Of a stretch of 64,000 bases of DNA, positions 26,801 through 38,800 are shown one piece after another. This stretch comes from Botryllus schlosseri (lineage: Eukaryota), in the NCBI GenBank assembly GCA_051294905.1, contig CM119380.1, positions 17,298,001 to 17,362,000 of the forward strand, given 5' to 3'. The notes under the pieces were generated by a model that was not told where the DNA came from, searched no databases, and saw nothing but the letters and a program-made list of their open reading frames with translations. The position numbers and the translations under genes are program-made. Each line of letters begins with the position of its first letter. The stretch's first letter is position 1.

Positions 26801-29800
26801 GTACATGTAAGATGCGCCTACCCAGGACGCATCAAAGTTATCTACAGAAGCCACAAGTATAACCGCTCGAAATACAGTAGCAGAGTTGGTCAAAATAGTC
26901 ATGGTTGGTAGCTGAATTAAAGAAACGTCCTAGTTTCCACTCAATTACAAATATCGATTTCCAAGTAAGTATAAAGTAAGTATTGGGCCTAGGTTTGGCA
27001 GAAAAACTTGAAAACTGTCAAGTAGAATCGGAAGTAATCATAAGTATTTGAGTAGGTAGTGCAAGCATACGCGAAAGATAGTCGTGATGAAGTGCCGCAA
27101 ATGATACGTTGCATAATGCGTATCAGATCAAGGACTGGTTGGATGAATGGATGAAAATACAAGCCCTCAGGTGGCTACTTTATAAATCGCATGAAAATCC
27201 AGAATGATTAAGGATTCCGTGCTCGAATTGCGATCAATTGATGATTTATTATGCAGCAAATCAAATCACTTTCACAATACAGTTACGTTCGCAAACATAA
27301 GCCGGATAGAAACCCTACACTTTGCCGGCAGTAATGGTGTTTGATGCAGGCAAAATGACATACCATAATTTTCAGTTCCTTTTCCGTAGGCCCGATAATG
27401 TGCAGAGTTTCGTCGTCTTCGGCTTTGTTGCGTTCGTACGTTCCGATACTTCCAGCGGCTTGGAACTGTCTAGTCCACTCCACCACCCAGTTTCCGTTCA
27501 AAATATACTCCTCGGATGAGCCGGCAACTTCCATCAAAGCTGAAATGTAAAACAATGCCTTGTACGGCCCATCGCAATGCAGTCATTTATTACGAAAACG
27601 GTAGGTTAACGGTCGTAAACTCAAGTACTTCTTTGGGTATTGTTGCTTTTAAATACTGAAGAACTGTAATTATATAAATAGTATACGTTACGGACCATTT
27701 TTTAAAGCAAATCGAGGCCCGCGGCAACTCAGTTAGCCTAGGTCTCGAGCTAATGTTAGAAAACCGTTTTTTTCAACCTCACTGACACACCGCATCAGAT
27801 GGCAATGAGCGATATGAGTATGCAGAGGTGGTCAAAGTAGTCAAGAAAGCTACTCCAGTAGAAGTAGAAGTAGCGACGAAAAAATCTACTCAAGTACGAG
27901 TAGAAGTACTTCTTCCATAAGCAACCTAAAACTACTTGAAGTAGAAGTAGAATTTACTGACTTTAAATCTACTCAAGTAAGTAAGTAGTTGTGAAAACGA
28001 TCGTAATTCGTTCACATGGATTGTCAAAAGGTGCAAATTGAGCAATGCAAAAGGTGCCGAGCTTAATTCATATTGATGTATACCAGGAGGTATTCAATTT
28101 TCGAGAGCATAAGCATTAGTCCGCATCATGGGATCAAAATGATAGTAGCCTATTGATATGGAAATGCGATACTAATCCTCTGTTTAATCGAACAACCCGT
28201 TTTAGAAAATATCATGGTATGGCGCCCTCCCCCATATTATAAGGCCCGTGGTGTAGTCGAAGAGCAATAAGGAGAAGTTGTATAGGATACGGTATGAATA
28301 CTTTGCGCGATTAGTAAATGTGAATAAAAATATGGTGGATCGTGAAAATGCCATATTGTGTAGCTTTATTCCCGGAAATTAAAGGCATTACTACACTTGC
28401 TTTTATACTTCAACATGTATGTTATCGAGACAAAAGAACTGATATTGATTAGAGCTCAAAGTATATGATACTGGGAATTGAAAAGGAAATCTAAATAGTA
28501 CTTATAAAAGCGGAATATGTATTTCATGTCTAAAGACAGAAAGTTTCAAAAGGTGGTATGCTAGCACAGCTCTAAAATTGAAAAAAGTCTGAGTTCACTT
28601 TCCAAATTAGGACACGCCATGGACTGCTAGATTACGATATGAGAAGTAAATGTTAGATTGCGAAATATCAGTTTCAAACCTTATGATGAGCCATATATAC
28701 TGTGGTGAAATATTCCATATGGGCAAAGGGTGACAATGCGGTGTGAACGGTGCCACGCCAACCCGCTAACAAATTTATATTCACCGATACTTTCGTGAAA
28801 TCATACTGGCTATTCCGTATCCACTGAGCGCGAAGCGCGACTAAAATTTTTGGGTTTACTCAACTTTTATGAAAATGAAATGTTGATACTCCGTGAAAAC
28901 AGCCCCGAAATTCCTCAGGCTATCTTCCTGATTAAAGGATTAAACTACTTCTACTTGACAAACTGAAAATAGCGAAAAGTAAGTAAGTAGATCACATAAA
29001 ATTACGAAGTAGAAGTAGCGAAAATCAGATCTACTTGAGTAAGTATCAGAAGTAGAGGAAAACTACTTGAGTACTTCGAAAAAGTAGAAGTACTTCGTTA
29101 CTGACCACCTCTGAGTATAACAGTAAAGAAGTTTGGGGTACATAGCAATCGATGGCCGGATTACAAAGCGCAGCGGCCGTAGTACGATTGGTTGCGTTCT
29201 ACCAATTTAAGCCACACCTTCAACAGCGTTGCCATCATTTCAGCAGGACAGCAAACACTAACTTTTGGTCTGCATAACACACAACTCACCGGAAACAAGC
29301 ATATAGGATATTGGATTGAGTTGGTCCAGAAAGGTCTGTAAACACCCAGAACTCAACTCAAGATGTTCCATACCTACTCTTTCTGCTAAGGTGGATGATT
29401 ACAGGGGTATACTTGAAGTTTGCTATTGCTGGTTAAGTGAGTATAGCAGGAGGGAAGATCAACAAAGCTTCGAGGGAGATTATTACAACACGGTTTTGCG
29501 GCACTACGCTAACACATATCCGTTGTGTTTTTCATCCGATGGCACGTTTAACAAACTATCAATTTGCCATTCTCTCATCCATGGAACTCGTTCAGTATTT
29601 ACTTACTAAATTCTGGTGATTATTTATAAGTGGCTTTGAACCGACTACGAAAACTATAGGAAAAGCGCACAGGTGTGCGTGAGGCGTCATTGTAGGGTAT
29701 GTAGCGCTTCCAAAAACAACAGCTTAAAATTTAACGAACTCTAAGTAGAAGTAAATTATTATTAAAATATCGTCAAACATATTCCATCACTGTCAGCTAG

Positions 29801-32800
29801 CGGCCGTCAAAGTTGGTTAAAACAGACTGTGAGTACGTATTGAGTATTACCTGATATACAGCAGATCACATAAAAGCGGATCATTGAGTTTAATGGGCGC
29901 GGGGCGCATATCAACTACCAAATATAAATGACAAATATCAATAACTCTGCTGCGATCAAGTCATACCTCTGACTTGCAACTCAATGCGAATTTTGACTCG
30001 AGTCTACAATCATTTCAAAATTTTTCAAGACAAGTCGCGCAAATTTTCAGTGACGCGAGTCAATTCGAATCTTCCGAATTCTTCCGATTTCGATACGATT
30101 TCATGTCACCAAATATTTTCTGTAAAGTCCTATAGTCGCTCGACACGATGTGTGGATGCAAAGTGCTTATGTAATGCATATACACGGAAGGGAAGCGGCG
30201 TCAGTCTTGTCAACTCACTAAGCATGCCATTTTATAACTACCAAGACAATTGAATAGTATATTCATATTGAAATGAACCCGAATATTTTCGGCTGACACT
30301 CGTCAGGGGTAATCGTCAGCAACTAGTAGAGAATTCATTTTACCCACATTTTACCCCTGACGAGTGTCAGCCGAAAATATTCGAGTTCATTTCAATATGA
30401 ATATACTATTCAATTGTATATTGAAGTTCTGTACCTCCAAGAAGCTGTTCTGTTCAACTACCAAGACGTTACGAGTGACAGGTTATTTAAGTTGCTGAGA
30501 ATGCTGTTCAGTGCTTATAGAGTATACTCCAAGCTAAATAGACTACTGGAGTTTATGATAATTCAATGAATGCGAGGTTTAGAGATTGACACGCAGTATG
30601 AAAGCGATAGACAGTATGATACCAACCTCAAGTGTATAGATAAAGGAATATCAATGTTGAGCGTTATTCCAAAATTATCTTCCTTCATTGATGCTCGTAA
30701 ATGCCATTGGCAATATCACAGACAACCCATGATGGATTCAGACATATCATGTGATATACAGATTTACGACCTTGGGGAGTCTCAGCTATATAGTTTCACA
30801 CGAGCCTACTAATTGAATAAATTTATGCATGGATATAGTTAGGGTTGCATTTAAAACAGACGGTGTTTTAAAACACTTTGTTTAAAACATGTTTTAAACG
30901 GTGTTTTAAACAAATGCCTAAGTTTTTTTTCAAACGTTATATAATCAAGGCATAGTTGTGTAAATATTGTTGAAAAAGATGTAGTACGAACCCACGGACG
31001 ATTTACACCCAATATATTACGAATACGTTGTGGAGTGGCTGCAACCCTCGAAATCGTCGTCGGTTCAACAGTTATAGCAAGCAGATATATAGATCATTGG
31101 TACGGAATGGGTGTTCTGATGATAATGACCGCAGACCATAAAATGCTACATAACGATGTAGTCCCGTTTAAACATAATTTTGGTCTTTTGGGACAGTGGT
31201 CGAAAGCCCTTTTCGTCAAAGGAGTCATAATTACCCTATATATCCCATTGTCTATGTCAATCGATTGTGATGTCACAATTGAAGATTCGTGACATCATAG
31301 TTGAAAAGACAACAACAATAAAACATGTTTTAAACAAGGGCCTTGTTTTGAAAATGTTTGTTTTAGATTGATTTTTGTTTTAAATGCAACCCTAGATATA
31401 GTGATATTATTTACCTGCAGTCAGAATGATCATCATACGTAATTATATCTGTTAAGGACATGCAGCCCAAGCTGTCTCGAAAACGTAAATGCAAATAGAT
31501 TTAAGTAAAAATGAATTAGTATTGGTGACTTATTCATTTTTCGGAGTGGCTGAGAGGTTCAGAAAGATTGGCGAAGTAGAATATTCAACGATTGATGATA
31601 ACCAAGTCTAGAGTCATTTCATATTTCTCATGTGATGAGTCAGAATCAATTCAGTGATCCGGAACAAGCCAAGGCAGTCGAAAAGCGGACTCGAGTCATC
31701 CAAACACTGCAATATAGTGCCACGATCCGGGGAACTTACTATACTAGAAAAAATACGAGTAATAACTGAGTGACTGATTAACAGCGACCGTGACAGTGCG
31801 TACAATACGAAGATCGCCACAGCTACAGAACGGTTAATATATTGTGTGACAACCTGCATTAGAAATGCCTAGGAAACAAGCGTGTTCCTTTATTGACCAA
31901 GTGACCACATCCACTGCCATCAAATAGCGAGGCATACACAATACACATTCAGTACAAGATACGCTCAAAAGCGTGACTAAGCATCTGGGAGTCACGCCGA
32001 TTAAGAACGCCAACCCCATGACAACGCCTATTTATAGTCCAACACGATTATACAACTTGACAGGCCGATCGTGCACATAAGCTGGCATGCGGTAAGCCTA
32101 TTTGTTGAGATTGATACAGCGTCGCAATGTCAACAAATTTATTTTTCAGCAGTCGGCCTAGCCTGTAGGAGTGCTAGACGGGATTTATTATTGTGCGAAT
32201 CCAATCGCGCACGCACACGAAATATGTTTTGAAGACAAATGCAATTTATCATCGATGAAAAGCCACGGCTTTCTCAGGCTCGAGCTGTTGTTTGGCACGT
32301 ACAGAAATATGGCGTTACCGTACGCAGGTCGCAGCCTCGCCACCGAAATGTGATTTACACAAGTGCGATACGTATTTCAACGCAGCCACATTCCTTTCAC
32401 ATACGCCGCTCCTTGATAAACAGATGCCATGATTTATGGCGACAATGTTGAAATAGGCAATCTGTCGTTTGATGCCGAGTCAATCACGAATGGTAACTAC
32501 CTGTGTACTGGTAACACGCACTCGTATTTGAATGTCATGAGTTTTAAAACTTGGAGTTTGAACTATTATAGAAGTCGTTCAAAGTTAGAGGTCTAATGTT
32601 GCAAGTTCACTTCCCCTGTATGCAGTATCCGTTGAAATGAACGGTTCAGCGCAATAACAAAAACAGAGCTACTTCTACGAAACTTCCTGGTTTAAACGTG
32701 CGCTGAATTCAATAGAGAGAAAGAGAGAGAGAGAGAGCGAGCCATGAAACCAAACATGCAATAGCGTAATTCAAAGGGACCATGAGAGTGAATGCTCAAG

Positions 32801-35800: not shown

Positions 35801-38800
35801 ATAGCTATAGTAAGTAGATATAGATCATTGGTACGGAATGAATGTTTTGATGATGATGACCGCCGACCGTAAAAATGCTGCATGACGATGTAGTCGTGGT
35901 TAAAGATATTTTTGGTCCGTTTATGACAGGGGTTGAATCCTATTTCGTCAAAGGATCTATATTTACCCGATATTTTCAATTGTGAATATCAATACATTAT
36001 GACGTCACATTTGAATATGCGTGGCGCCACGGCGTAGAAAAAAAAACAAGAAAAATATTTTTTAAACAAGGGACTTGTTTTAAACAAGTTTGTTTTAAAC
36101 ACAACCCTACATAGAAAGTCTGAAAAACTAGGCATGAAAAATGTCAAACACTCATTGTCAGGATAACTATCATCTGCCATCGAGGAGGACACAGGCAACG
36201 TGTCCACTGTTCATCCAGATGTTGATTGAAATACATACGGATCTGTTGCCTACCCCCACATGCCATGCTATATGTGTAGGGTTGAACAAAATTGTGTACC
36301 TGGGTGATTCGATTCAGAGTTAAGAAACGAAATAGTAAAAGAGACTTTACAGCTCCAAGTATGCATCTCCTTTGCGGTCCCACGAGGAAAATATTGCCAG
36401 TTACACGTAATCCAAAGCAATACGTATATTTTTTGTTAGTCTAAAAAAGCTACTTTCAACACTCCACTTATAATTGATGCTCTACTCAGATTCAATCACT
36501 CGAATCGTTGTGACCAGCCCTAGGTGCGTACACTGTGCAATGCATATCAGATAATCCGTTACGTAGCAGACCATAAGCATAACAGGCGCGATCCCGATAA
36601 TATCTATTTCACTACGTAACACGGCCTCGTGAGATTGGATGCTTCTAAATCTGACTACGCCGATTCCGTTAAAGACGAGATTCCGTTTACCTCCGGCCGG
36701 TAATCTGCTGATGACGCTTTCGAATTTCCTGCACGTACTGTTGTTGCCGCCGCAGACTCCGCAGGCGTCTTCGGTGGCGTTAGAACTCAATACCCCGTCA
36801 CATCCGATTTTCTGATAAAAAGAGGTCGTGTTGAAGCAATCACCGGTATTAGACTTGGGACGGAACTAAATTCAGTGTAAGTTATCTGATGCGCTAGAAC
36901 GACACATCACAATACCCACGGCGATAAAGTTCTATGGTCCCAAGATAACAATAATTTCATTATTTTAAAACACAACAAGAGTGCATACAATAAATAACTG
37001 GAAGGAGTCAAAGCGACTTTGGAGTCTTTTAATCGCACACCCACTGCTTGCATATGTAAAAAAAAGAACATGTAATTAAGAAGTATGCACACTGAATTAA
37101 AAGTGACAGAAGATTACATAAAACTTGATAAGCAATGAAACTGAAGTGGCATGTGTCGGTAGGCGAATGCTGTATGCCACATCGTCGTCAAGTATTATCA
37201 AGCTCGGACCAGTGTTCATTTAGTTAATAGGTTCTTCATCGATATTCCGTGAAACATTAGGGGTCCCATGAGCCAGTCTCGGGTGTTCTGTGGAGGTCCA
37301 GACACACACGCAACTATATAGTACCATGACCTTAGTAGGCCACGATAGTATATGATTTATGATGTTGCCGGCAATTAGGACCGATCAGTATAGTCGAAAC
37401 GTGCTTGCTGTGGTGATACGTTGTGTGCAGCGGCGTACACAGGTAAGGTAGGGGTTCCAAATCGAAACCCCGTCATTCAAAAATGCCAATCTTCATCTCG
37501 AATAGCTATTACATAAGATCATTTGCAATTAAGCTTATTGGTATAACGCTACTTCGTTTCGATCGAACAATGCGATGGCTGCACTTTTCGAAGTAAAGCC
37601 TCGCATTTCTGAACTGGTATCTGAAAGGGACCAGCAGACGTCCCACTTATTTGCATCAAATATTCATTAATGTTTTCGTTTTGTGTCAAAATTATGTTTT
37701 ACTGGCTTTGTTCTTTTAACGGTCTGTTGCACGGCTCATTTTATGAACCAGTGTAATCGAAGAGCTTCTTGGCGGTATGGAGCTTCAGCATACAATTGAA
37801 TAGTATATTCATATTGGAATGAACCCGAATATTTTCGACTGATACTGGGCTGGGGTAATCGTCTGAAACTAGTATAACTGCCACCGAAAGTATTCGTTTT
37901 AATTTCAATATGAATATACTATACAACCAGTATAATCTTCAGTGTTGTATTAGATGAGTAGTTAGATGTGTATTGTCGTAGAATTTTGTATTTATGACTC
38001 AGAGCAAAAATTGGGTTCCTCAAAGGCTTGCGGATTAGCGCAAGCGCTCCCCAGGTTAGTAAATGCTAAAAGCACCGAGCTAATTAGTGGCATCTTCTTG
38101 TATTGTCTTGTATTGTATCAACACAGGATATGCTCGACAACTGTCGTAAATACCGGCTAAATAATGTGTGCTTTGATTTCGAAGTAATGACGTCATTGAG
38201 TATTGAGGGACATGACCGCAATAGAAGTGAAAAATTAACTTGACGATTTCTGGATTTTGCATGATTAGAACAAAACATTCTGTGATTAGCGATTTGTTGG
38301 TCGTGCTTGTGTGTATCTCAAATATTTTTCCGGCCATATAGGCTTTATATACTCACCACACATTCGCCTTTAACACATATTCCTTTTCTCTGTGCGCCAC
38401 ATCTTGTGCCGTCGTGCAGCACTCCGAAAACATTGTAAAACATGTAGTTTGATGTCATGCACGTCAGCTCGCATGTGTTCCCTTCCTTTCCTGATCGAAG
38501 ACGATTAACATTCATTTCAATATATCAGACGGAAGACCAGAAATAGGAAGGAATCGCGATAGTTCGAGGTTTCGGCGATTTTTGGCTTCCGAACATTGAT
38601 AGGAGGCTGTGATCGAGTATTGTATATCCGAATTCTTGACCTATAACCAATCTATGGCAGTGACAGTGTCACATTTGTGGTGTAATAACGGGTTCAGCAT
38701 GCAACACTATGAAAAGTGACGCCGAAACCACAATCCTCACCATAAGTTAAACCGATTCCTAACTTGAAGCATCGCGTACCACGTTAACGGACCGTATTAA

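What the first reader, a model, noticed from the sequence alone, without database searches (positions are those of the whole stretch)
30236..30467. Minimal dimer-type hammerhead ribozyme in a 208-bp hairpin retroposon, on the host pre-mRNA strand
Seen: an element bounded by a 12-bp TSD, made of two ~65-bp inverted arms plus a short tail. Each arm reads ACCC-CUGACGA-G(UGUCAGC)C-GAA-AAUAUU-C-GGGU in its own direction. The minus-strand motif (30277-30310) has a perfect 4-bp stem I; the plus-strand motif (30353-30386) has one stem I mismatch (GAGU). Established: Penelope-like elements carry minimal type I hammerheads with reduced stem II and a palindromic stem III that cleave as dimers, often have inverted pLTRs, and make long TSDs. 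Inference: a tiny non-autonomous PLE or retrozyme-like family that is essentially just two opposed ribozymes. The intact motif is transcribed within intron 7 of the ADAMTSL5-like pre-mRNA, with predicted cleavage 3' of position 30281.
Basis: partly seen in the sequence, partly recalled or inferred. Interest (0 to 1): 0.82.

Follow-up and report, generated by a model that had tools for sequence, protein, structure and literature searches.

The report
Stub of a Penelope retrotransposon insertion
The 208-bp hairpin is a real but ordinary relic: a severely shortened, head-to-head double insertion of the tail end of an abundant Penelope-like retrotransposon, whose known hammerhead ribozyme motif it carries on both strands, most likely inert here.

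Summary
There is a 12-bp target-site duplication, 67-nt inverted arms (one mismatch), a one-sided tail, and a hammerhead (HHR) core on each strand.

The HHR is of the Penelope-like element (PLE) type. The same 3' region lies about 100 nt after the stop codon of an 856-aa RT/GIY-YIG ORF, in units repeated every 2,683 bp. The exact 34-nt motif occurs 3,093 times in this genome.

It is not a "tiny family of two ribozymes". About 20 similar hairpins each have a different inner junction, so they arose independently. They share the outer ends, 9-14-bp duplications and usually a tail on one arm only. This matches the published PLE signature of an inverted 5'-truncated copy with a one-sided tail.

"Reduced stem II" needs amending. 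Its 7-nt loop pairs with a box 4 nt upstream of stem I, with compensatory changes across three PLE families.

The minus strand is the host (ADAMTS-like) sense strand. Cleavage there is unlikely: the transcript folds into a -129.5 kcal/mol hairpin, no same-sense partner motif lies in the window, and no RNA reads cover the unique flanks.

Earlier follow-ups of this scan reported the same PLE hammerhead pseudoknot on other DNA of this genome.

The parts
30236..30247 (.). Left copy of the 12-bp target-site duplication AACTACCAAGAC. Its last two bases (AC) also match the element, a 2-nt microhomology.
   Evidence: (family D2)
30246..30336 (-). Inverted, tail-less arm. It is the reverse complement of positions ~200-290 of the 323-nt PLE 3' region. 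Its outer end lies at the internal CAATTG end point used by other tail-less copies.
   Evidence: It is 100% identical to other genomic copies over query 11-102.
30277..30310 (-). Intact minimal type I hammerhead motif on the host sense strand. Stem I is 30307-30310 with 30277-30280. The core CUGACGA is 30300-30306. GAA is 30288-30290. The palindromic AAUAUU is 30282-30287. C17 is 30281, and the predicted cut lies between 30281 and 30280.
30315..30320 (-). Upstream box GCUGAC, 4 nt before stem I. It pairs with GUCAGC (30292-30297) inside the 'stem II loop', forming a pseudoknot helix.
   Evidence: Compensatory changes across families, counted. Predicted duplex energy -10.6 kcal/mol, against -5.4 for the competing core-loop hairpin.
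30337..30350 (.). 14-nt junction filler between the two arms. It is a stuttered near-copy of the adjacent ATTTTACCC and is unique to this copy.
   Evidence: (family D7)
30351..30416 (+). Direct arm: PLE 3' region positions ~224-289, 5'-truncated at TTACCCC. It lacks the upstream box.
30353..30386 (+). Second hammerhead motif. It is impaired by A at 30384, which breaks stem I, and by the missing pseudoknot box.
   Evidence: Every RNA read over 30384 shows G, the family state.
30397..30399 (+). ATG of the PLE ORF. In full units it lies 14 nt after the hammerhead cut site. Here only the first codons are present.
30417..30455 (+). PLE 'tail', the optional ~34-nt 3' extension ending in GAAGCTGTTC, plus a 5-nt TGTTC slippage repeat at 30451-30455. 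It is present on this arm only.
   Evidence: literature PMC8557442 and PMC11167929
30456..30467 (.). Right copy of the 12-bp target-site duplication.

Best explanation
The element is a dead-on-arrival, extremely 5'-truncated insertion of an abundant, recently active Penelope-like element (PLE) of Penelope/Poseidon architecture: DKG N-terminal motif, RT, then a C-terminal GIY-YIG endonuclease.

Proposed sequence of events:
1. The PLE endonuclease cut the target with a 12-bp stagger.
2. cDNA was made from the 3' region of PLE RNA off both cut strands. On one strand it started at the distal start site, which gives the tail, with a 5-nt TGTTC slip. On the other it started at the internal start site at CAATTG, which gives no tail.
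3. Both cDNAs aborted after about 105 and 91 nt.
4. They were joined 5'-to-5' through a 14-nt stuttered filler, and gap repair produced the TSD.

Shown here: the TSD, the arms, the one-sided tail, the unique junction, and the identity to the autonomous PLE. Inferred: priming on both strands (about 0.6, from the published in vitro behaviour of a PLE protein) and the order of events.

Each arm carries the hammerhead of the PLE pseudo-LTR. This is a type I motif with a 4-bp stem I, a single G-C stem II pair whose loop forms a helix with a box upstream of stem I, and a palindromic stem III that needs a second copy to form. At this locus the ribozymes are passengers and most probably inert.
For: Link to an autonomous PLE:
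- The window arms are 99-100% identical to the 3' end of longer copies.
- In L068 that 3' region follows an 856-aa ORF that has RVT_1 (E 1e-7), the DKG motif and a GIY-YIG-like VVYEFKC..YVGRT..H block (Pfam GIY-YIG E 3.7e-4).
- The nearest protein clusters are HTH_animal/DUF8422/RVT_1/GIY-YIG families of animals.
- Units repeat every 2,683 bp.

Independent origin of the hairpins:
- About 20 hairpin copies have different inner junctions but the same outer ends.
- Arm ends cluster at positions ~284-298 (tail-less) or 317-323 (tailed).
- About 31 of 34 head-to-head pairs have one of each. In the subset not seeded with the window element, 10 of 11 do.
- TSDs are 9-14 bp with a mode of 12.
- Among the first 100 exact motifs on C1, all 14 opposite-strand pairs within 3.3 kb are ordered (-,+) and none (+,-).

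Agreement with the literature:
- Dual min-HHRs 100-700 bp apart on opposite strands, taken as truncated PLEs (PMC4209133).
- An inverted 5'-truncated copy and a 30-40-bp tail at only one end (PMC8557442).
- A PLE protein that cuts and extends both strands from two internal RT start sites that bound the tail (PMC11167929).

Likely inertness at this locus.
Against: - Priming on both strands was not observed here. If each arm chose its start site independently, pairs with two tails or none should be common, and they are rare. Some coordination is therefore unexplained.
- Frangieh et al. saw no difference in start site between strands in vitro.
- The census of pairs is small and partly seeded by the window element itself.
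- The GIY-YIG Pfam score (21.2 bits) is just under the curated cut-off (22.6).
- No cleavage assay exists for this hammerhead.
- No RNA reads in the unique flanks, with about 6% of one run read, does not prove the intron is never transcribed.
Confidence: 0.85

Rival explanations
1. One reading: a tiny non-autonomous PLE or retrozyme-like family whose master is itself a ~208-bp hairpin of two opposed ribozymes, copied as such.
For: About 25 genomic matches cover nearly the whole 205-nt element at 77-91% identity and have similar lengths.
Against: - When aligned, each copy has a different inner end on both arms and different filler, so they do not descend from one hairpin.
- The window copy is closest (99-100%) to the ends of long and full-length PLE copies, not to other hairpins.
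- Arm lengths range from about 60 nt to several kb, up to two full units on each side.
- There are no tandem direct repeats, and only one same-sense ribozyme per strand, so no unit can be excised or circularised as in retrozymes.
Confidence: 0.04
2. Same PLE origin, but the inverted arm arose by snap-back. In this reading the first cDNA folds back and copies itself, rather than cDNA being primed on both target strands.
For: - The arms are perfect inverted copies.
- The order is always (-,+).
- A one-sided tail would follow naturally if self-copying stopped short of the cDNA's 5' end.
Against: - Snap-back from the tailed first cDNA predicts that the tailed arm always reaches further 5' than the tail-less arm.
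- In the window (tailed arm from position 224, tail-less from 200) and in roughly half of the pairs the tailed arm is the shorter one.
- A tail cannot be copied from a tail-less first strand.
- In vitro, a PLE protein extends both strands (PMC11167929).
Confidence: 0.12
3. A DNA-transposon MITE with terminal inverted repeats.
For: It has 67-nt terminal inverted repeats, a TSD and small size.
Against: - The TSD varies in length (9-14 bp) and has no fixed sequence.
- The ends are asymmetric, with a tail on one side only.
- The 'TIR' length varies from copy to copy with unique junctions.
- The sequence is the 3' end of an RT-encoding element.
Confidence: 0.01
4. The insertion has a present-day effect on the host gene. 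The intact minus-strand hammerhead might cut the ADAMTS-like pre-mRNA, or the 67-bp intronic hairpin might be processed or edited as double-stranded RNA.
For: - The intact motif, including its pseudoknot box, is on the sense strand of the host gene.
- The hairpin is long and nearly perfect.
- It scores like microRNA precursor models, below their thresholds.
Against: - The ribozyme strand is locked in a -129.5 kcal/mol hairpin.
- Stem III needs a second same-sense copy, and none is in the window.
- Even the isolated monomer prefers two other small hairpins.
- PLE hammerheads cleave poorly or need the PLE protein (PMC4209133, PMC11167929).
- No reads cover the unique flanks, and all reads on the element come from other copies.
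- The insertion is very young, so selection has had no time to act on it.
Confidence: 0.05

Closest known systems
Minimal hammerhead ribozymes of Penelope-like elements (Cervera & de la Pena 2014, PMC4209133; Lunse, Weinberg & Breaker 2017, known to me only from reference lists and memory)
   Same: - A type I motif in the PLE pseudo-LTR.
- Conserved CUGANGA / GAAA core, G10.1-C11.1 pair and a short 4-bp stem I.
- A palindromic stem III that can form only between two copies.
- Thousands of copies per genome.
- Pairs of motifs 100-700 bp apart on opposite strands were explicitly reported.
   Different: The schistosome min-HHRs described there have a long helix II of 7-8 bp. Here helix II is one base pair, and its loop pairs with a box upstream of stem I. 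I could not check whether Lunse et al. describe this arrangement, because the paper is not held.
Structural signature of PLE insertions (Craig et al. 2021, PMC8557442; Evgen'ev & Arkhipova 2005 as cited there)
   Same: - High 5' truncation.
- An inverted 5'-truncated copy adjoining the direct copy.
- A 30-40-bp tail at only one end.
- Partial tandems that form pseudo-LTRs.
- The hammerhead located within the pseudo-LTR.
   Different: Nothing essential differs. The window copy is simply at the short extreme, with 91-nt and 105-nt arms.
In vitro mechanism of the anole Poseidon PLE (Frangieh et al. 2024, PMC11167929)
   Same: - Two RT start sites internal to the template whose spacing equals the tail.
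- Both target strands cut and extended.
- The hammerhead lies next to the ORF start, and the start sites lie inside the first codons of the ORF.
   Different: - Here the ATG lies 14 nt after the cut site rather than before it.
- The start sites lie about 20 and 55 nt into the ORF rather than 111-118.
- Genomic pairs here show one tailed and one tail-less end almost always, an asymmetry not reported in vitro.
Hammerheads with a helical tertiary contact between the stem II loop and sequence beyond stem I (Perreault et al. 2011, as cited in PMC10085705)
   Same: Watson-Crick pairing between stem II loop nucleotides and nucleotides 5' of stem I, which brings stems I and II together.
   Different: Here the hairpin part of stem II is reduced to one pair, so the pseudoknot supplies nearly all of the helix. 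The box is also a near-repeat of the catalytic CUGACGA, so the loop could alternatively sequester the core.
Metazoan non-LTR retrozymes (Cervera & de la Pena 2020, PMC7229834; Li et al. 2026 preprint, 10.64898/2026.07.22.740005)
   Same: Small non-coding sequences with type I hammerheads, derived from or mobilised by PLEs.
   Different: Retrozymes are tandem direct repeats whose units are cut out and circularised. This element is an inverted pair with one same-sense ribozyme per strand and no sign of being copied as a unit.

Membership tests
Hammerhead ribozyme (type I, PLE-type minimal) | Conserved core: C3 U4 G5 A6 N7 G8 A9, G12 A13 A14, A15.1-U16.1, and H17 that is not G | tested here: met
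   Read directly on both strands. The pattern is found only at these two places in the window. There are 3,093 exact copies in the genome against 0 for the control.
Hammerhead ribozyme (type I, PLE-type minimal) | Stem I pairing across the cleavage site | tested here: met
   Minus strand: ACCC with GGGU, 4 bp. On the plus strand this is not fully met, because A at 30384 gives GAGU.
Hammerhead ribozyme (type I, PLE-type minimal) | Helix II closed by G10.1-C11.1 | tested here: met
   The G-C pair is invariant in five family variants. The rest of the helix is supplied by box-loop pairing with compensatory changes: CUGAC/GUCAG, CUGGC/GCCAG and CUAAC/GUUAG. All cells pair, and slid controls pair at 0-37%. 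The fourth variant in that count was a picked single copy.
Hammerhead ribozyme (type I, PLE-type minimal) | Palindromic stem III that allows an active dimer | tested here: met
   AAUAUU is self-complementary. The predicted duplex is weak, about -3 kcal/mol.
Hammerhead ribozyme (type I, PLE-type minimal) | Self-cleavage | not testable with these tools
RNA reads gave no end at the predicted site, and those reads come from other copies.
Hammerhead ribozyme (type I, PLE-type minimal) | Match to the Rfam hammerhead covariance models | tested here: not met
   No hammerhead family hit at gathering score or at E up to 10. This is expected for minimal motifs without hairpin stems II and III, so it does not count against the core-based assignment.
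Penelope-like element (EN+, Penelope/Poseidon architecture) | A single ORF with a reverse transcriptase | tested here: met
   This holds in full copies of the family, not in the window fragment. The 856-aa ORF L068:1840-4410 matches RVT_1 at E 1.1e-7, above the cut-off, and carries the DKG motif.
Penelope-like element (EN+, Penelope/Poseidon architecture) | C-terminal GIY-YIG endonuclease | tested here: inconclusive
   Pfam GIY-YIG E 3.7e-4, 21.2 bits against a cut-off of 22.6. The VVYEFKC..YVGRT..R..H block is visible. The nearest protein clusters carry GIY-YIG.
Penelope-like element (EN+, Penelope/Poseidon architecture) | Pseudo-LTRs from partial tandems, with the hammerhead inside them | tested here: met
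   Units are spaced 2,683 bp apart. The motif lies about 100 nt after the stop codon and again upstream of the next ATG.
Penelope-like element (EN+, Penelope/Poseidon architecture) | Inverted 5'-truncated copy, a tail at one end, and a variable TSD | tested here: met
   Seen in the window element itself and in about 31 of 34 pairs. The order is always (-,+).
Metazoan retrozyme | Tandem direct repeats, each with a same-sense hammerhead, that yield circular RNA | tested here: not met
   Only an inverted pair is present, with one motif per strand in the window. Circular RNA is not testable here.
MITE (DNA transposon derivative) | Fixed-length TSD, symmetric terminal inverted repeats, and copies descended from one master | tested here: not met
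   TSDs are 9-14 bp, the tail is one-sided, and the junctions are unique.

The most novel reading that the evidence does not exclude
These very short head-to-head stubs may record how PLEs integrate. The near-rule of exactly one tailed and one tail-less outer end, with either arm able to be the longer, would mean the two target strands are primed in a coordinated way from two different RT start sites, perhaps by a dimeric ribonucleoprotein. Separately, the hammerhead's loop could pair either with the upstream box (active fold) or with its own CUGAC core (inactive fold), which would make it a switch set by context or by the PLE protein.
Probability: 0.3. Interest if true: 0.45.

Novelty: new member of a known kind. 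Interest (0 to 1): 0.2.

Why it matters
This matters little for the host gene. The element is one of hundreds to thousands of similar PLE stubs in this genome and is probably silent. Three points are useful.

- For annotation, such hairpins should be labelled as truncated PLE insertions. They should not be called MITEs, microRNA precursors (Rfam miRNA models score them up to 72 bits, below threshold) or a new ribozyme family.
- Many young copies with clean TSDs, two discrete end points and unique junctions give a natural data set for the still unresolved PLE integration mechanism.
- The covarying box-loop helix refines the model of this PLE hammerhead and tells experimenters which flanking nucleotides to include in cleavage assays.

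Tried and rejected
- **Rfam, whole window and local search at E up to 10:** no hammerhead hit. Only sub-threshold microRNA and WsnRNA46 models matched, and they match any long hairpin.
- **L036 as a possible full-length copy:** its ORFs have no Pfam domain. It is another hairpin-type copy, and the intact unit was found in L067/L068 instead.
- **RNA and DNA reads:** these gave no evidence on transcription of this locus. There was no contig spanning the insertion site, so presence/absence polymorphism could not be judged. No read ends were seen at the cut site.
- **Conservation of the hammerhead versus its flanks among 64 decayed arms:** no difference, 0.962 against 0.968. This is uninformative for a young family.
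- **Folding of the tail region, looking for a stem-loop at the internal end point:** not better than shuffles, z -0.26. I make no claim about it.
- **Thermodynamic folding of the isolated motif:** the minimum-energy fold is two other small hairpins, not the hammerhead. The dimer cannot be written as a nested structure, so only its pieces were scored.
- **Fetching other PLE families to test the pseudoknot on full sequences:** I used counts and matched strings from pattern searches instead.
- **Family with loop GUCGG:** mostly keeps the box CUGAC, which gives a G-U wobble. Only 1 of 8 copies is fully compensated, so this is weak evidence.
- **Lunse et al. 2017:** not held in the library.
- **Organism:** not identified.
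Full report
**1. What is in the sequence**

- AACTACCAAGAC occurs at 30236-30247 and again at 30456-30467.
- Between these lie two 67-nt arms (30246-30312 and 30351-30417), 99% complementary and 38 nt apart.
- A one-sided extension of about 39 nt runs from 30417 to 30455.

On the minus strand, 30277-30310 reads ACCC-CUGACGA-G-UGUCAGC-C-GAA-AAUAUU-C-GGGU. This has every conserved hammerhead core position, the G10.1-C11.1 pair, C17, a 4-bp stem I and a self-complementary AAUAUU where stem III should be. The plus-strand copy (30353-30386) has A at 30384, which breaks one stem I pair.

The core pattern occurs nowhere else in the window, against 0.22 expected by chance.

Rfam's hammerhead models do not detect it at any threshold tried. 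The only hits are sub-threshold microRNA-type models that match any long hairpin.

**2. Where it comes from**

A search of the window's own assembly (495 Mb) found two kinds of match.
- Whole-element matches at 77-91% identity.
- Many 99-100% matches to a single arm plus the tail.

Reading those loci showed one constant 3' end (…GAAGCTGTTC), TSDs of differing sequence and length, and hairpins whose turn-around point differs from copy to copy.

Extending inward led to full units on contig C6.
- An 856-aa ORF carries the PLE-typical DKG motif and an RVT_1 domain (E 1e-7).
- It has a C-terminal GIY-YIG-like block. The Pfam score for this block is just below the cut-off.
- There is no cysteine-rich linker between RT and EN, which is the Penelope/Poseidon layout.
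- The nearest protein clusters are animal RT/GIY-YIG families.
- Units repeat every 2,683 bp, so the 3' region doubles as a pseudo-LTR.
- The hammerhead lies about 100 nt after the stop codon. In the next unit the ORF's ATG lies 14 nt after the predicted cut site, so the 'tail' is coding sequence.

The exact 34-nt hammerhead occurs 3,093 times in the genome, against 0 for the control. Sister families with a CUGAUGA core add about 1,200 more, against 91 for the control.

**3. Not a family of hairpins**

I aligned about 20 non-redundant hairpin-type copies. Each has different inner ends on both arms and different filler. They are therefore independent events and do not descend from a hairpin master.

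What the copies share is their outer ends. Arm ends fall either at positions ~284-298 of the 323-nt 3' region (the CAATTG site, tail-less) or at 317-323 (tailed).
- About 31 of 34 head-to-head pairs have one end of each kind.
- In the subset found with an internal probe, which is not biased by the window element, 10 of 11 do.
- TSDs are 9-14 bp, most often 12, with no common sequence.
- Opposite-strand pairs are always ordered (-,+), meaning 5' ends inward. This held for 14 of 14 among the first 100 exact motifs on C1, at spacings from 72 bp to 3.2 kb. It also holds for the CUGAUGA families.
- Arm lengths run from about 60 nt up to two whole units per side.

The window element sits at the short end of this range. 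Its tail-less inverted arm is 91 nt and its tailed direct arm about 105 nt. The two are joined by a 14-nt stuttered filler, and the 3' end carries a 5-nt TGTTC slip. It differs from other genomic copies of the family at a single arm position, so it is young.

**4. Agreement with the literature**

- Cervera and de la Pena (PMC4209133) found minimal hammerheads in all PLE pseudo-LTRs. They noted pairs of motifs 100-700 bp apart on opposite strands, took most to be truncated PLEs, and saw only weak cleavage, as dimers.
- Craig et al. (PMC8557442) describe the inverted 5'-truncated copy adjoining PLE insertions and a 30-40-bp tail that is often present at only one end.
- Frangieh et al. (PMC11167929) showed that a purified PLE protein cuts and extends both target strands. 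They also showed that reverse transcription starts at two internal sites whose spacing is the tail, that the hammerhead needs the protein to cleave, and that it is dispensable for insertion in vitro.

The window element matches this signature feature by feature.

**5. Mechanism**

Shown here: a staggered 12-bp target cut, two inverted cDNA-derived arms taken from the PLE 3' region, two discrete outer end points, and a unique junction.

Inferred: both nicked strands primed cDNA synthesis, and the two abortive products were joined.

I considered simple snap-back of one cDNA. It predicts that the tailed arm is always the longer one. In the window and in about half of the pairs it is the shorter, so snap-back is the less likely route.

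The near-constant 'one tail per insertion' is not explained by independent choice of start site on each arm. It remains open.

**6. The ribozyme**

The 7-nt 'loop' of the one-pair stem II is not idle. GUCAGC (30292-30297) is complementary to GCUGAC (30315-30320), which lies 4 nt upstream of stem I.

Two other PLE families in this genome have changed both sides together, while the catalytic CUGAY stays constant.
- Loop GCCAG with box CUGGC, in 14 of 19 copies.
- Loop GUUAG with box CUAAC, in nearly all of the ~100 copies listed, out of 212 matches.

On representative sequences all cells pair, three of five pairs show changes on both sides, and slid controls pair at 0-37%. One of those five rows was a picked single copy, so only two compensatory pairs rest on abundant families.

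The predicted box-loop duplex (-10.6 kcal/mol) beats the competing hairpin in which the loop sequesters the CUGAC core (-5.4).

A helical contact between the stem II loop and sequence beyond stem I is a known hammerhead feature (PMC10085705). Two earlier follow-ups of this scan reported the same thing for PLE copies elsewhere in this genome. I tested it independently here, and it holds.

In the window only the minus-strand motif keeps the box. The plus-strand arm is truncated just before it.

**7. Effect on the host**

The host gene is on the minus strand. An ADAMTS_spacer1 exon lies at 27283-27555, and cysteine-rich exons lie at 36482-36790 and 38345-38515.

Cleavage there is unlikely, for five reasons.
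- The transcript folds into a 67-bp hairpin of -129.5 kcal/mol, z -19.
- Stem III needs a second same-sense copy, and none exists in the window.
- Even the isolated monomer prefers other folds.
- PLE hammerheads are weak or protein-dependent according to the literature.
- In one bulk RNA-seq run the unique flanks have zero depth, and every read over 30384 shows the family's G rather than this locus's A. This last point shows that the family is transcribed. It says nothing positive about this locus.

**8. Verdict**

The element is a new member of a well-described kind: a truncated, inverted PLE insertion carrying the PLE hammerhead. It is of low interest in itself.

The modest added value has three parts: the covariation support for the pseudoknotted helix II, the one-tail regularity, and the argument against snap-back.

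Noticed in passing
window 37746-37937 (minus orientation): A second, older PLE hairpin stub in the neighbouring intron of the same gene. It has a ~47-nt tail-less inverted arm and a tailed direct arm (element 37759-37924), flanked by a 13-bp TSD GATTAYACTGGTT with one mismatch. Its hammerhead core has decayed and no CUGANGA remains.
   Followed up: partly
window 27815-29111: A contig of run X15 joins 27814 directly to 29112, skipping 1,297 bp that are highly repetitive in all runs. This is probably another transposable-element insertion that is polymorphic between individuals.
   Followed up: no
L067 4484-8937 and L068 354-4581 (G000:C6:6608483-6617581): A large head-to-head PLE array with two inverted and two direct units. 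The innermost unit on each side is incomplete at its 5' end. The 856-aa ORFs are open, one outer end is tailed and the other tail-less. It has the same architecture as the 208-bp stub, at full length.
   Followed up: partly
L068 1885-1926 and window 30397-30455: The PLE ORF's ATG lies 14 nt after the predicted hammerhead cut site, and the 'tail' encodes its first residues. A single unit therefore cannot encode the whole protein and needs the upstream pseudo-LTR.
   Followed up: partly
window 30446-30455: The 3' end reads TGTTC-TGTTC, whereas other copies end in a single TGTTC. This is a 5-nt slippage at the start of reverse transcription.
   Followed up: no
L033 6540-7135 (G000:C14:23398541-23399134): Nested or compound PLE hairpins: one head-to-head stub appears to have inserted into or beside another. 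This is consistent with the reported tendency of PLEs to insert into existing copies.
   Followed up: no
genome-wide: Several sister hammerhead families have a CUGAUGA core and different loop/box pairs. The pattern gives 1,201 matches against 91 for the control. Some are in tandem at ~2,778-bp spacing and some in (-,+) pairs about 100-200 bp apart.
   Followed up: partly
window 30260-30398: The hairpin scores 72.5 bits against Rfam mir-3913 (threshold 100) and 39.8 against Wolbachia WsnRNA46. These are artefacts of a long perfect hairpin and a warning for automated ncRNA annotation.
   Followed up: yes
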